DNA of 64,000 nucleotides from Iphione sp. A-MEVVRFRX5 (taxonomy: Eukaryota): contig OZ320314.1 of the NCBI GenBank assembly GCA_976226885.1, positions 31,000,001-31,064,000 on the forward strand, written 5' to 3'. The notes beneath the pieces are model-generated. The model ran no database searches, was not told the origin of the DNA, and was given only the letters and a program-made list of their open reading frames with translations. The stretch's first letter is position 1. Each line of letters starts with the position of its first letter. Positions 28,676 through 34,150 of this stretch are shown here, piece by piece. Made by a program: the position numbers and the translations under genes.

Positions 28676-29505
28676 TTAAATAAAAACTTATTTTGCCTTT
28701 TATAAACCGCTGAGCACAAACCGTATAGATGAGAGTGTGATTGATTTGGAAATCACCCTACGCGAAATAATCATAGACGAAGGTGGAGAGGCAGCGTCAT
28801 GCGAAGATACAGTGTCCCTGTTTTACTTGCGTTAACTGTTCTATACTCCATAAGCAACCTAATGTACATATCATATAAATAAGGTTGATTAGTAGAGGGT
28901 TTCCAATCCACTCTATGAGACCTACTACGTCATCATGACTAGATACTTGCCTTCAATACTAGGTTACAGACATTCAGTTAAAGGTATCTAACGTAATGGC
29001 CCTTTCATTCACACAGCTACTGTCAGGCCGGTGCCCACGGGGTGGTTACATATATTACACAAATGTATTGACGAAACTGCACTTATTGTCCAGCTTGGAA
29101 TGACAAGTCAATAGAAGGGCGCAAGTGGTCACTGGTCAACCCATTCTTGGCATGGACAGTAGTAAATGTGAGATTATTGGATGACATTGTTTGCACTAAC
29201 TGGCAAACGACTGGCTGTGGCGGGCTTGCAATGGTTAACACTTGCGACAAATTTGTTCGCGGTGTGCTGTTGCTTGTTCAGGCCCATATGTTCAATTCCC
29301 TCGCAATCGAGTTCCTCCCTCCTGATGGAGCATTCCATGTGCGTAACAAAACGCAATAGGCCAACGGCTTTACGTATTTATCGGTGGAAAAGACTCAGCG
29401 TTAATAAGGTAAGAAGGATGATTGAAAGGACTCGACTATTGGCCTACTACTGGCCAACCCATTTAATAACCTGCCAGGTTAAACATTTTCTATTTTATGT
29501 ATTGG

Positions 29506-29634
29506 ATACAGCACGAGGGCGTGCATGTATGCGTTATATTGGCACGGTTTGGATTAGCTGCACGAGACGAAGTCGAGTGTGGCTAATCCAAACCGTGACA
29601 ATCTAACGCATACATACACGCCCAAGTGCTGTAT
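29506..29634. repeat. 129-bp imperfect palindrome (63-bp arms, GAA loop at 29569-29571)
   Basis: Manual pairing gives ~54 Watson-Crick pairs, 2 adjacent G-T pairs and 7 mismatches, including a tandem GA/GA next to GAC-GAA-GTC. Confidence 0.95.
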
Positions 29635-29797
29635 GTAGCTTAAAGCACGGCTCCACACGTACACATAATCAATGAACCATGACTGAAAGAACCAATAAGA
29701 ACCTCTTCATTACTTGCTTCATTAGAATATTCACATAGATTGCTTTGGTTCAAATTACAAACCCCAACCGGTACACTGCTGTCACGACGGTCTAACC

Positions 29798-31464
29798 ATG
29801 GACTTGTTGGATGTCCCAAATTTCGAGATCGAATTAGATCTATGCACTCAAGCAGATCAAATGGAAAGAGAGTACTTATCACAAACCCAAACTCAGGAGT
29901 CTAGTCAAGAAGATGATCTTGGTAGTCGATTTGCACCTGTTCAATCCGATCATGAGTTTAAGGCTTTCATTGCATCGAGGATACCCAAGAACACGCAACA
30001 ATCATCCAATTGGGCTCACAATATATACCGTGAGTGGAGAACATGGAGGAATGGTCATAGCAAATCTCCTGGTGATAGGAAATGGCCTGTCCCCGCCTTG
30101 ACCACTGAGAAGTTGGACTTATTGGACTACTGGTTGGCCCGTTTTGTAACGGAAATTCGGAAGAAGGACGGAGACGACTATCCCCCAGGTAAGCAGCATT
30201 TCATATGCCTATCTATAGCATGGGTGGGGGGGGGACCTCATATCAGGAAAGGTTTTGAAGATTTTATGTCTTATTTGTTCCAGGTACACTTACCAACATA
30301 GCCGCCTCTATTCAAAGATATATGCGGGATGTCCTGGGCAGAGCGGACATCTGGTTGTTGAAGAAGGACGGCCCACACTTCAAGGTTTTCAGAGACGCCT
30401 TGGACGCTCGGAGGAAATTGCTTATTTCTCAGGGGGTTGGCACTCAACCAACACGTGCAGACCCCATATCCATGGACGATGAAGTTGAACTCTGGGAGTC
30501 TGGAGTAATTGGATTTCATTCCGCTCAGTCATTGTCATATGCTTGTTATTTCTATAATTGCAAGCTGTTTGGTTTTCGAGCCAGGGACGAACATGCTAAT
30601 CTAATGGTCGAGCAGTTCACCTTCGGGACCGAACGAGATGGGTCACAATTTCTGCAATTCAATGGTCGTCTTGCAAAAACTGTCACAGGAAAAGTCAGCT
30701 CGAAATCCACTCCAAGGGTTGTAAAGCACTACGCTCAGCCTGAGAATGAACGATGTGTAGTCAAGATTTTTAGGAAGTATATTGCATTGATTCCCCCTTC
30801 AGGCAGGTTTTACCGTAGACCCATGGCGAACGTTAATGGCCATATAATATTCAGTGTTCAGCATGTCGGTGTGAACAAATTGTCACAGTATATGGCCTCT
30901 ATGTTCCAGTCTGCTGGGATCGACACGGAGGGCCGGAACATTAGCGGCCATTCCGGCAAGGTGACGTGTTGCACTACTCTTTACGAGCATGACTTTGACG
31001 AACAGGCAATCACCTCGCGAAGTGGCCATAGGTCCAACGCTGTGCGTTTGTACAAGAGGCCATCCATTGAGCTTGAAAAACGCATTAGTAATTCACTCCA
31101 ACCACCCCCGCCCAAAGCCACCAAGCCTGCCACCATTACTCGTCCTGAACCAACCATGAATCATGCCACCAGTCATAAACCCTCACATTCCACCCCTATC
31201 AGGACCCCACCTGTGCCCTCCCCGTCCACTAATGTAATGCCGGTCACCCCAATCAATCCGCACACATCCAAGGATCAAATCGTCCAAACAGAAATGACCC
31301 CCCCTCTCCAAGACAGCAATCACTCACTACCTCCCTCTCCCGCCCAAGGTACCATTCAAATGGCCTCTTTGATTGATCGGAAAATGTTTACGGTTGTCGT
31401 TCCCTCAGATGTTTATCAGGTCGCCATAATCAAGGACGACAAGAAGGTTGTAGTTCAAATTTAA
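29798..31464 (+). CDS. DUF3504/Crypton tyrosine recombinase, 523 aa, join(29798..30188,30284..31464); family related to the ZMYM2/3/4, QRICH1 and KCTD1 C-terminal domain
   Basis: Kozak accATGG. Exon 1 has RIPKNTQQSSNWAHNIYREW..LDYWLARFVTEIRKKDGDDYPP, which splices in frame to GTLTNIAASIQRYMR. Catalytic-type residues are R229 (FGFRARDEH), K262, H353-x-x-K356 (SGHSGK), H379 (SGHRS) and Y387 (VRLYKRP). These are followed by a Pro/Thr-rich linker and a short hydrophobic C-terminal segment. There are no stops or frameshifts. Confidence 0.92.
30189..30283 (+). other. 95-bp phase-1 GT-AG spliceosomal intron
   Basis: The donor is CAG|GTAAGC and the acceptor is TTATTTGTTCCAG|G. Removal joins the ORF at 29798 to the ORF at 30322 in frame and restores the family motif YPPxTL. 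Confidence 0.9.
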
Positions 31465-31716
31465 CTTGTTTTATATGTTTTCCTACTGTAATGTGTGTGC
31501 AATTAATCTCCTTTGCTGTATTTGATCATTTCAGCGATTCTTTAAGTCAAACAGTATTTATCCGTCTAATGCCATTCTTTTTACAGTCATAATATTGCAA
31601 TTATTCCCATTCTACCACGGTTCTTTCGAAGTATTTTTATGTCTTGCTATATTAATTATATGTACATTCTATTTATATTCATCCTGCTATTTATAATTTG
31701 TGTTTCACCCGTCATG

Positions 31717-31722
31717 AATAAA
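31717..31722 (+). promoter_or_regulatory. Candidate polyadenylation signal of the recombinase gene
   Basis: AATAAA about 250 bp after the stop codon, within an AT-rich 3-prime UTR and inside the element. Confidence 0.5.
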
Positions 31723-32229
31723 AACTCTTTTTACATTAATTCTAACTATGATTTCTTTTCCTTCCATCCAACACTCTAACAACGCTCACCCCAATGACAT
31801 ATGCAACCCACTAATCCACAGCTAACGACACCTCCGGCCCTCATGTATTCAATGCGGCAGCTTGTTTGTGTCACCTACCCACCCGTGCTGTATGCGAAAT
31901 AGTCGCACTGCACGGCTACATAGGCCTAAAGAGAAAAAAAGATGGCCGCCGTGCTTTAAATGGTAATAGTCAATTGAGAAGTTAACTTCACTTCATTGCA
32001 ATAATTGATCCTAAAATGAATAATCTATTTACTTAAAGCAGGACAATCAAAAAAGAAAATCAGAGGAAATGAATTGCAACACTCAATATTAGCCGAATTC
32101 GAGCAGGAGTGCTTTCCGCCTATTGACGGATGTGCAAGGAATGGTATTCTAAAAAAAATCGTTCTTGCAAGTGAGCATGCTTTAATCTGATGTCTCTTTG
32201 AGGCCCATTACTTTACATAAGTATGTCGT

Positions 32230-34150
32230 ATAATTTGTTACTACAAGTTTTGTATTGACATAACGTTATACACGCCACTCATACTCAAGAGGATGAGTCT
32301 ATAAAGACATAAAAGCCAAAACATACGATAACTATGCGGATTCAAATTGCTTTCGTCGCTCCTATGGTAGTTTGCGTTCTGCAGCGGTCGGAAGTCATCA
32401 TGGACTGACAACATTCAATAGTCTCCTTCACTGCAAGCACTCAGTCTAAGAAATTCAGGAAGAAAATAGTGTTACCTTCCAAGAAGGGGCTCCTGTACGG
32501 CTTCTCCTTGAAGTTGTTCATGGCGGTGCAGGGCCTGCCGTTCGCTGATGGCCGCCAACGAAAGGTCCCGCACCGGCGCGCTCACGATGACCGTCAGTAA
32601 CCGCGCGCCAAGCTGCTGTGCGGCGCCCCCTGGACAGTATGCTTGACACTAATTAACCTGGTCACGTGCCAGTCGGACCCGCGAAGCCAATTGGCACTCG
32701 CTAGGCCGATATCGACCGGGTCAGGAAATGAGTGAAGGAATGAGTCCGTCCGTCAAGCGAATCAAGCGCAGCCGTCTGACAAAGGCTGGGAAGCGTCGAT
32801 GGGGGCGGGCGGAAACTGGTCACTAAACCGTCGCATCCGCTAGAACGTCCGATCAACACTGGTAGGGGAAACTTAGGACACTTCCAATCTGCGTTCGATG
32901 GGTACGATGTCCGGCGTTGTACTGAATACAGTCCACTCGATTCAGCGTTATATTTAAGCGTCGTGGGTGATGATGCTATTCTCAGAATGCCAAACTGAGA
33001 CCTTCAGAGTAAAATCAATATGCTCCGCCGCAGGAATTGTCCGAATGTGCAATGAGTTAATATTACGTTAAGCTAGTGCAGCTGTGTTAGATTTCGGCCT
33101 GAAACATAATCAGCATTAAAAATCATTGCCACCGCATATTTGGCTTAATTGCAGTTCTTCTCGGTCCGCTCCCATCTAGTCAATACACCCTGTGAGAAAA
33201 CCCGCTGCGCTATGTTAACGGTAAAAGAAAGGATGAGATGCCGTTCCGGACGGAGCACAGGCCGTGTAGGCTTTAGTGTTGTTAGAAGCCCGTGTAAGGA
33301 GATATATCCAGCCTTCAGATTGAATACGCTGGAGAACTAAGTGGGGGCTAGACTGTTTGAACTGTGACCAAAGGGCCACTTGATGCACATCCCCTATGGA
33401 AACGTTCTTGATGGACCTTGGCTTGGCATCGCTGTTGCCAGGGCCGCCTCTTAAAGCACTATGCAATCTTGCCGAAATTCTCTGAGGGGAACCGCCTGGA
33501 AATTGAGAAACCCTTTCCCGTCCGGCTATCAGCTAGCCTTGGTGGAAGTTTCTGACGGTAACAAAATACACTTTTCGTGCCCTGTCCCCAGGCTATGTCA
33601 AACACCGAAACACTGTCCGTTGCCTTTCAGGACATAAACGGCTTTTACTGTGGTAATAAGGCACGAACCTTTGTGTGAGGCCCTCAGCAACCAACGCCTC
33701 CCAGCTTGTGGTCTGTTGCTCCGAGTGGTTCTGGCAGCGGCAAATGCAGTGCCAGAAGCAGCAGCAGAGGCTTCGGTGGCGGCTGTGTTGGCAGCTGTGG
33801 AGGTTCCGTCTGCCCTGCTGGTGGCAGCAGCAGCACCACCAACAGTGGTCAGGGCGTTAGCTTTGACGGTCCTAGAGCCGACACAGCCGGTGGGAGACCA
33901 CGGGAGACTGAGGCCTTGCTTGTCGGCTGTCCTGTGTCTGCCTGCCTGTTTGCTGACTTAGAGGAGCGGGTATCTTCCAACGTGTGATGATGAACTCGCT
34001 CGTCTTGTCCTAAATCCGTAATCCTACGGCCACCTCTTCTTGATGATAGCATTCATAGCCCAGTCCCAGCCAAAGGCCAGTCTTACTTTGTCCTCCCTAC
34101 CGAGATGCCAAAAGCAGCGGCGGCACCCGCTGGCTCAAAAAATATCTTAC
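32230..34150 (-). pseudogene. Unassigned degenerate coding-like island (possibly a decayed transposase or viral gene)
   Basis: GC-richer than the flanks, with GC3-biased minus-strand segments (AMNNFKEKPYRSPFLEGNTIFFLNFLD; IKNVSIGDVHQVALWSQF; FGWDWAMNAIIKKRWP; an Ala/Thr-rich stretch). Multiple stops are present and the identity is not established. Confidence 0.3.

What the first reader, a model, noticed from the sequence alone, without database searches (positions are those of the whole stretch)
29500..29651. Three-site recombination architecture: left half-site, internal lox-like full site, right half-site
Seen: the arm consensus GTGCTkTA occurs as TACAGCAC (29507-29514, left end), as GTGCTGTA-TGTAGCT-TAAAGCAC (29626-29648, inverted arms with a 7-bp spacer) and as GTGCTTTA (31951-31958, right end). 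The element is thus two modules, each flanked by inverted arms: the hairpin and the gene. The 6-mers just outside the terminal arms, ATTGGA and AATGGT, match at 4/6. Established: tyrosine recombinases act on inverted arms around a 6-8 bp spacer (loxP, FRT, dif). Inference: end-joining would create GTGCTTTA-spacer-TACAGCAC, mirroring the internal site. That could allow excision, independent inversion of either module, or release of the hairpin or gene module alone.
Basis: partly seen in the sequence, partly recalled or inferred. Interest (0 to 1): 0.8.

Follow-up and report, generated by a model that had tools for sequence, protein, structure and literature searches.

The report
Split palindrome ends of Crypton transposon
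The repeated 8-letter motifs are real and belong to a conserved end structure of a Crypton jumping gene (a large DNA palindrome that is cut open when the element inserts), which gives concrete candidate recombination sites for animal Cryptons, reported so far to have no terminal repeats.

Summary
They sit in a 2,464-bp animal CryptonA transposon (window 29496-31959) that encodes a two-exon tyrosine recombinase.

Two of the four "arms" are simply the base of a 129-nt hairpin. The other two form a perfect 12-bp inverted repeat around the gene.

The same layout recurs in at least 7 elements from other genomes and metagenomes:
- a leader (TAWGT...)
- box1, hairpin and box2
- a short spacer ending in ACTTA
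- box3, then the gene
- box4, ending in TA(A)

A 592-bp gene-less derivative in a relative keeps exactly these ends.

Joining the ends with a TA/TAA overlap recreates an inverted near-copy of the internal site in 7 of 7 elements. The recreated spacer is always 2 nt longer.

So the three-site idea is largely right in its anatomy. Three parts are not supported:
- the comparison of flanking 6-mers
- spacer variability
- module inversion or release (orientation is fixed in 12 of 12 and 9 of 9 elements)

No circle junction or empty site was seen, so the mechanism is inferred.

First-stage notes of this scan describe the same layout on other DNA of this genome. I found no description of it in the papers searched.

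The parts
29496..29505 (+). 5' leader TATGTATTGG. This is the inferred left terminus (TAWGT) and the spacer of the site that is opened on integration.
   Evidence: The alignment of 5' ends shows homology starting here and unrelated sequence upstream. The L003 versus L004-insert homology block starts at the equivalent TAYGTAGTAG.
29506..29634 (+). 129-nt imperfect hairpin. Its base is box1 (ATACAGCAC, 29506-14) paired with box2 (GTGCTGTAT, 29626-34).
   Evidence: dG -58 kcal/mol, z -15. Homologous hairpins in 10 of 11 relatives folded have z from -6 to -18; the degenerate Lingula copy does not fold.
29561..29579 (+). Hairpin tip CACGAG-ACGAAGT-CGAGTG: a GAA triloop flanked by CGAG/CGAG, which gives tandem G.A mismatches on this strand.
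   Evidence: The same tip motif is found in L001, L003, L004ins, L015, L042 and L044, and a variant in L025 and L040.
29635..29639 (+). Internal spacer (GTAGC) between box2 and the 12-nt box3.
   Evidence: Relatives have CTAAC, TTGAC and CTCAC followed by TTA, so ACTTA is conserved.
29640..29651 (-). Box3, TTAAAGCACGGC, the inner limit of the 5' terminal cis region.
   Evidence: It forms a perfect 12-nt inverted repeat with 31948-59 (I20). The 5' block retained by the non-autonomous L004 insert ends at the equivalent box3.
29798..30188 (+). Exon 1 of the recombinase gene (N-terminal QRICH1-like domain), followed by a phase-1 GT..AG intron at 30189-30283.
   Evidence: The spliced ORF is 523 aa.
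30284..31464 (+). Exon 2: DUF3504 / tyrosine-recombinase domain plus a Pro-rich tail. It carries HSGK...GHRS...Y motifs.
   Evidence: Pfam DUF3504 at 1e-18 and a weak Phage_integrase match. 63 homologues, the best at 62-65% identity, from Lingula and an ENA assembly. Motifs.
31885..31908 (+). 3' subterminal direct copy of the hairpin's left arm (GTGCTGTATGCGAAATAGTCGCAC). It holds the fifth octamer.
   Evidence: 80% identical to 29526-45 (D7). It aligns with the conserved TAYGCGATATAGTC block at the 3' end of L001, L003, L004, L005 and L002.
31948..31959 (+). Box4, GCCGTGCTTTAA, the inferred right terminus (ends in TA or TAA).
   Evidence: In the L003 / L004-insert pair, homology stops 7 nt or less after the equivalent box.

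Best explanation
Window 29496-31959 is one copy of an animal CryptonA-type transposon, a DNA transposon moved by its own tyrosine recombinase. The octamers are the cores of four roughly 10-12-nt boxes with consensus YCGTGnTnTA. These boxes are the outer parts of a single imperfect palindrome of about 175 bp.

In the integrated copy the palindrome is split. Its outer left arm (box4) ends the element at the 3' side. The rest lies at the 5' side: leader, box1, hairpin, box2, spacer and box3.

Inference: excision as a circle joins box4 to the leader at a shared TA/TAA. That restores the palindrome and creates two inverted lox-like sites that flank the hairpin. S1 is box4, a spacer of about 9 bp, then box1. 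S2 is box2, a 7-bp spacer, then box3.

Inference: recombinase protomers bind the boxes. Strand exchange for integration and excision takes place in S1, next to box4, with AT-rich targets that share little more than TA(A). S2 and the hairpin stay intact and serve as architectural or accessory sites.

Shown: the anatomy, its conservation, the position of the ends in a related family, and the mirror relation between S1 and S2.

Inferred: protein binding, the crossover point, and the circle.
For: Gene: two exons encoding DUF3504 / tyrosine recombinase.

Same layout in other elements: W, L001, L003, the L004 insert and L044; 5' end only in L015 and L002 (Lingula); also in a second family (L010, L022, L031) and, for the leader, hairpin and spacer, in a third (L025, L040).

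Box3/box4 inverted repeats: 12 of 12 in W, 12 of 12 in L044 (15 nt in all), 11 of 12 in L003 and the L004 insert, 11 of 12 in L022, 10 of 12 in L031 and L001. The highest scores lie within an element or family.

A 592-bp gene-less derivative in an L004 intron keeps only the 5' 115 bp (leader to box3, 91% identical) and the 3' 129 bp (94% identical) of the L003 family. This delimits the ends and the cis-required parts.

The junction built with a TA/TAA overlap aligns to the reverse complement of the internal site in 7 of 7 elements.

The hairpins fold with z from -6 to -18, and L025 versus L040 show a compensatory change.

Literature: tyrosine recombinases use inverted arms around a 6-8 bp spacer, and Cryptons are thought to move through a circle using short terminal direct repeats (PMC3212892).
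Against: - No circle junction, tandem junction or empty site was seen for this or a closely related family, so the TA overlap and the crossover point are assumptions.
- The ends of the window copy rest on homology to another family. There is no second copy in the window and no sequencing run was listed.
- The inferred S1 spacer of 9 bp is outside the usual 6-8 bp, and it differs from the S2 spacer.
- The sequence after box4 (TAAAT) and the leader (TATGT) match only partly.
- The conserved CGAG/CGAG mismatches and the triloop tip have no role in a purely duplex lox-like model.
- The second catalytic arginine reads lysine in this subclade.
- L042 carries the whole palindrome uninterrupted.
- The L012/L023 family has the hairpin 3' of the gene.
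Confidence: 0.6

Rival explanations
1. The substrate is folded DNA, not duplex DNA. The restored palindrome would act as an extruded cruciform or a single-strand hairpin. The box4:box3 stem and the box1:box2 stem would be the two protein-binding arms, and the 8x6-nt internal loop would act as the spacer. This is formally like an integron attC site or the folded CTX-phage attP. The sense strand would be marked by tandem G.A mismatches.
For: - CGAG/CGAG pairs and a GCGAAGC-type triloop are conserved across families and make sense only in an intrastrand fold.
- Their orientation relative to the gene is fixed in 9 of 9 elements.
- The sense strand folds slightly better than the antisense strand in 6 of 6 elements.
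- A constant 2-nt asymmetry of the internal loop is seen in 7 of 7 elements.
- Stem sequences differ between families while pairing is kept.
Against: - There is no evidence for a single-stranded stage in Cryptons.
- The energy differences between strands are small (0.3-5 kcal/mol).
- Conserved arm sequences (TAYGCGATATAGTC, three copies per element) fit duplex protein-binding sites equally well.
- The analogy rests on my knowledge of attC and CTX, not on a test.
Confidence: 0.2
2. The boxes and the hairpin are not crossover sites. They would be regulatory or accessory elements, for example autoregulation of the promoter about 150 nt upstream of the ATG, silencing-RNA production, or maintenance of the circle. 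Recombination would use only the short terminal TA(A)/TAWGT repeats, as proposed for other Cryptons.
For: - Published Crypton models need only 4-6-bp direct repeats (PMC3212892; PMC13465315).
- S2 lies just upstream of the gene.
- The hairpin orientation is fixed relative to the gene in 9 of 9 elements.
Against: - The gene-less derivative keeps the hairpin, box3, the arm copy and box4 at 91-94% identity while losing the gene and any need for its promoter.
- Box4 sits exactly at the 3' terminus in every family.
- Box3 and box4 match best within an element or family.
Confidence: 0.12
3. The pattern arises by chance or as an artefact. Two octamers come from the hairpin stem and the others are random matches of a short degenerate motif.
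For: The motif is short and degenerate. One of 100 shuffles reaches 12 matches in the window. One copy lies in coding sequence.
Against: - All the excess lies inside the element.
- The repeat is really a 12-nt perfect inverted repeat.
- The same boxes occur at the same places in elements from other genomes whose coding DNA is only about 64-74% identical.
Confidence: 0.03

Closest known systems
Crypton DNA transposons, CryptonA group (Goodwin 2003; Kojima & Jurka 2011, PMC3212892)
   Same: A single gene for a DUF3504-type tyrosine recombinase, with no other enzyme. No long terminal repeats and very short terminal direct repeats (TA/TAA; TATGT versus TAAAT). Non-autonomous derivatives exist. CryptonS termini (TATGG) resemble the TAWGT leader.
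   Different: [quoted passage not shown] Here the ends carry a conserved subterminal hairpin, four boxes, a 12-bp inverted repeat around the gene, and a third copy of the arm.
loxP / FRT / dif core sites of tyrosine recombinases
   Same: Inverted arms around a short spacer. S2 has 8-12-nt arms and a 7-bp spacer.
   Different: The arms are shorter than 11-13 bp. The spacer is partly conserved (ACTTA). The second site exists only after the ends are joined and has a spacer of about 9 bp. The two sites flank a long palindrome. Nothing is known about cleavage positions.
Internal complementary region (ICR) of DIRS1-type tyrosine-recombinase retrotransposons
   Same: An internal segment that is the inverted copy of the joined element ends. 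DIRS elements also use a tyrosine recombinase.
   Different: DIRS elements are retrotransposons with RT/RNase H and long inverted terminal repeats, and the ICR is thought to work during cDNA synthesis. This element has no RT. The likeness is formal only, drawn from PMC13465315, the titles and my own knowledge.
Integron attC sites and the folded CTX-phage attP (tyrosine recombinases acting on folded single strands)
   Same: An imperfect palindrome with two boxed stems, an unpaired central region, a variable terminal stem-loop and strand-marking irregularities. The integrated unit is opened inside the palindrome.
   Different: Those are bacterial systems. No single-stranded stage is known for Cryptons. 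The box sequences are unrelated. The comparison comes from my own knowledge and was not tested.

Membership tests
Crypton (CryptonA) transposon | Encodes a tyrosine recombinase of the DUF3504/Crypton type as its only enzyme | tested here: met
   Pfam DUF3504 at 1e-18, a weak Phage_integrase match and a weak N-terminal QRICH1 match. No other long ORF lies within 29496-31959. Homologues carry the same domains.
Crypton (CryptonA) transposon | Catalytic tetrad R-H-R-Y | tested here: inconclusive
   The motif HSGK(V)T...GHRS...Y is present. By motif position, the second arginine reads K in W and in 49 of 51 protein hits that carry the motif, and R in other families among the fetched loci. The first R was not mapped by a structural alignment.
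Crypton (CryptonA) transposon | No LTRs or long TIRs; short direct repeats at the termini | tested here: met
   Only TA/TAA (TATGT versus TAAAT) is shared by the two termini. The 12-bp inverted repeat is terminal at the 3' end only; its partner lies 144 nt inside the 5' end.
Crypton (CryptonA) transposon | Mobility: several copies, non-autonomous derivatives, defined ends | tested here: inconclusive
   Met for a related family: the L003 family has a 592-bp derivative inside an L004 intron. For the window's own family no second copy was available.
lox/FRT/dif-type core recombination site | Two inverted recombinase-binding arms around a 6-8 bp spacer | tested here: met
   S2 reads GTGCTGTA-TGTAGCT-TAAAGCAC. 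The same arrangement is found in L001, L003, the L004 insert and L044. The arms are 8-12 nt, shorter than the canonical 11-13.
lox/FRT/dif-type core recombination site | Partner sites share an identical spacer (needed for module inversion or release between the sites) | tested here: not met
   The inferred junction spacer is 2 nt longer than the internal one and differs in sequence in 7 of 7 elements. The sequence after box4 differs from the leader.
lox/FRT/dif-type core recombination site | Recombinase binds the arms and cleaves at the spacer edges | not testable with these tools
   This needs EMSA, footprinting and suicide-substrate cleavage mapping.
DIRS-type element with ICR | Reverse transcriptase/RNase H gene and inverted terminal repeats | tested here: not met
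   The element has no RT ORF, so the likeness is an analogy of layout only.
attC-like folded recombination site | Recombination of one folded strand, with strand choice set by unpaired bases | not testable with these tools
   Only indirect hints were found: conserved G.A mismatches, fixed orientation, and a slightly more stable sense strand.

The most novel reading that the evidence does not exclude
Animal Cryptons of this clade use a structured-DNA recombination site. The circle junction would restore an extended palindrome of about 175 bp that folds as a cruciform or single-strand hairpin. It would have two boxed stems, a constant asymmetric internal loop, tandem G.A mismatches and a GCGAAGC-type cap, and the recombinase would read this fold. 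That would be a eukaryotic counterpart of integron attC or the folded CTX attP. The internal inverted copy of the joined ends might also be the forerunner of the DIRS ICR.
Probability: 0.2. Interest if true: 0.85.

Novelty: new variant of a known kind. Interest (0 to 1): 0.65.

Why it matters
How Cryptons move has never been shown experimentally. Their ends have been called hard to define, and animal Cryptons were reported to have no terminal repeats (PMC3212892). A 2026 paper on CryptonA elements still lists none (PMC13465315).

This analysis gives a conserved and compact set of candidate cis sites: about 156 bp at the 5' end and about 75-130 bp at the 3' end. A natural gene-less derivative keeps just these parts. 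That turns the mechanism into something directly testable through binding, cleavage mapping, mini-element assays and circle junction prediction.

It should also help curators to set Crypton boundaries and to find non-autonomous Cryptons. Finally, it offers a possible link between the end structures of Cryptons and those of DIRS retrotransposons.

Tried and rejected
- Second copy in the window: none found by blastn or tblastn.
- Public sequencing runs holding the element: none was listed, so read laying was not used and no junction or empty-site reads could be sought.
- Rfam over 29000-32500: no family.
- Tip motif in IMG/VR: 4 phage contigs without any Crypton gene, unrelated.
- L006, L056 and L057 do not contain recognisable ends.
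- Circular-contig signatures: none.
- The L017 'tandem' is a patchwork of partial repeats, not a clean head-to-tail junction.
- The introns of L001, L003 and L004 do not align, so there is no empty site for the L004 insert.
- Rejected: the hairpin as a pre-existing target or a separate foldback element. It travels with both ends in the derivative and is conserved across genomes.
- Rejected: termini at the TTAA of box3 and box4 that exclude the hairpin, for the same reason.
The left one is conserved element sequence.

Full report
**Observation**

The sequence holds all the motifs at the coordinates given. GTGCTKTA occurs 12 times in the 64-kb window, against 4.3 +/- 2.3 in shuffles. Six of these lie in the 2.46-kb element and the rest of the window is at the chance rate.

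Its arms are 29506-29568 and 29572-29634, with dG -58 kcal/mol and z -15.

The other two arms are the core of a perfect 12-nt inverted repeat: TTAAAGCACGGC at 29640-51 and GCCGTGCTTTAA at 31948-59.

It lies in a 3' subterminal direct copy of the hairpin's left arm (D7). A sixth, at 30722-29, lies in coding sequence.

**What the element is**

Between the repeats lies a two-exon gene: 29798-30188 and 30284-31464, with a phase-1 GT..AG intron and a 523-aa product. It has a weak N-terminal QRICH1-like match, DUF3504 at 1e-18 and a weak Phage_integrase match.

Its 63 homologues all carry the same domains. They come from invertebrate genomes (Lingula, Ptychodera, Mytilus and others) and from metagenomes, and the best are 62-65% identical. 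This is an animal CryptonA-type tyrosine-recombinase transposon.

The window holds no second copy. No sequencing run was listed. All comparative evidence therefore comes from relatives in other genomes: L001-L006 by protein look-up and L007-L055 from a metagenome scan.

**The architecture is conserved**

The same order of parts is found in L001, L003 and an insert in L004 (all from ENA assembly ERZ25767047), in L044 and, at the 5' end, in L015 (metagenomes), and in degenerate form in Lingula L002:
- leader TAYGTnnTrG
- box1, TAnAnCACGAG
- stem
- tip, CACGAG-GCGAAGC-CGAGTG
- stem
- box2
- spacer ending in ACTTA
- box3, TAnAnCACGR
- gene
- a 3' copy of the arm motif TAYGCGATATAGTC
- box4, YCGTGnTnTA(A)

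Two further families follow the same logic with their own sequences. One is L010, L022 and L031; the other is L025 and L040.

Ten of the eleven relatives' hairpins folded have z from -6 to -18. The degenerate Lingula copy does not fold. L025 and L040 differ by a compensatory pair.

Box3 and box4 match each other at 12 of 12 (W, L044), 11 of 12 (L003, L004 insert, L022) or 10 of 12 (L001, L031). The highest scores lie within an element or family. Coding DNA between these elements is only about 64-74% identical, so the arms are kept by selection and are not leftovers of recent common descent.

**Where the ends are**

An intron of the L004 Crypton holds a 592-bp gene-less element on the opposite strand. 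It consists of the first 115 bp of the L003 family (91% identical) and the last 129 bp (94% identical).

- The 5' block starts at TAYGTAGTAG, 10 nt before the hairpin base, and stops at box3.
- The 3' block stops 7 nt or less after box4.

Upstream of the leader, the five aligned 5' ends are unrelated. Mapped onto the window, the element runs from 29496 (TATGTATTGG) to 31958/31959.

**The mirror relation**

I joined the ends with the shared TA (TAA in the L022/L031 family) counted once. The junction then aligns with the reverse complement of the internal site (box2-spacer-box3) in all seven elements that have both ends. The only consistent difference is that the junction spacer is 2 nt longer.

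End-joining restores a palindrome of about 175 bp, with two inverted lox-like sites around the hairpin. S1 is opened on integration and S2 stays intact.

The overlap itself is an assumption. No circle, tandem junction or empty site was available.

**What is not supported**

- The gene lies downstream of the leader-hairpin-box3 module, on the same strand, in 12 of 12 loci that hold both.
- The strand-asymmetric features of the hairpin (CACGAG on the left, CGAGTG on the right) have the same orientation relative to the gene in 9 of 9.
- Frequent inversion of either module should give mixed orientations.
- No solo hairpin or solo gene module was seen.
- The spacers of S1 and S2 differ in length and sequence. 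This argues against conventional homology-dependent exchange between them.

**Mechanism**

Best reading (confidence 0.6): the boxes are recombinase-binding arms. The circle's S1 is the site exchanged with AT-rich targets at TA(A). S2, the hairpin and the three copies of the arm motif act as accessory architecture, possibly as arm-type sites for the N-terminal domain in the manner of lambda Int (inference).

Main rival (0.2): the site is read as a fold. CGAG opposite CGAG gives tandem G.A mismatches only on the sense strand. The cap is a GCGAAGC-type triloop, which I know as an unusually stable DNA mini-hairpin. The sense strand folds a little better than the antisense strand in 6 of 6 elements. 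The internal loop is constantly asymmetric.

Other rivals: a regulatory or accessory role only (0.12), and chance (0.03).

**Known versus new**

Kojima & Jurka (PMC3212892) state that animal Cryptons showed no terminal repeats. They also state that Cryptons are thought to use 4-6-bp direct repeats and a circle.

A 2026 paper on CryptonA elements repeats this and notes that some families lack a repeat description (PMC13465315).

Full-text searches for Crypton together with hairpin, palindrome or recombination site found nothing relevant.

The element itself is an ordinary Crypton. The end architecture is, as far as these searches reach, undescribed.

First-stage notes of this scan on other pieces of the same genome describe the same idea: an internal inverted copy of the circle junction, and TTAA-IR...IR-TTAA plus a terminal hairpin. 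They are unchecked and I did not use them as evidence.

**Limits**

- The ends of the window copy rest on homology.
- Binding, cleavage, the crossover point and the circle are inferred.
- The second catalytic arginine reads lysine in this subclade.
- L042 (complete palindrome 5' of the gene) and L012/L023 (hairpin 3' of the gene) remain unexplained. They may mean that lineages differ in which side of the palindrome is opened.

Noticed in passing
window 30943-30960 (HSGKVT); loci L001-L048: By motif position, the second arginine of the recombinase tetrad reads lysine (HSGK) in the window element and in 49 of 51 protein hits that carry the motif. Other families among the fetched loci have HSGR (9 loci) or HSGH (2 loci). 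All look like intact multi-copy elements.
   Followed up: partly
L004:3311-3907 (minus strand): A 592-bp non-autonomous Crypton derivative sits inside the intron of another Crypton's recombinase gene. It consists of the 5' 115 bp and the 3' 129 bp of the L003 family.
   Followed up: yes
window 29526-29545 and 31889-31908; L003, L001, L004, L005 3' ends: A motif of about 14 nt, TAYGCGATATAGTC, occurs three times per element: once in each hairpin arm and once about 35-60 nt before box4. In the L003 family 15 nt are identical. It could be an arm-type binding site.
   Followed up: partly
window 29561-29579; L015, L042, L044, L001, L003, L025, L040: The hairpin tip CACGAG-GCGAAGC-CGAGTG is conserved across families. 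It is a GAA triloop with flanking tandem G.A mismatches, and further CGAG/CGAG pairs lie at the stem base. The same 19-mer also occurs in 4 unrelated phage contigs (L058-L061).
   Followed up: partly
L042:2157-2303: Here the whole palindrome, including both outer arms (ACACACCTAGC / GCTAGGTGTGG), lies uninterrupted 5' of the gene, and no box4 was found 3' of it. This may be a remnant junction or a lineage that is opened elsewhere.
   Followed up: partly
L012:1150-1310; L023:960-1135: In this family the hairpin lies 3' of the gene. It is preceded by a box4-like ACCGGTTATA and a TGT leader, and in L023 it is followed by unrelated DNA with a (CA)n run. L023 has the 11-nt GTTATATGTCT duplicated.
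   Followed up: partly
window 31893-31947: The window copy has about 20-25 nt more between the 3' arm copy and box4 than its relatives, including an A-rich run.
   Followed up: no
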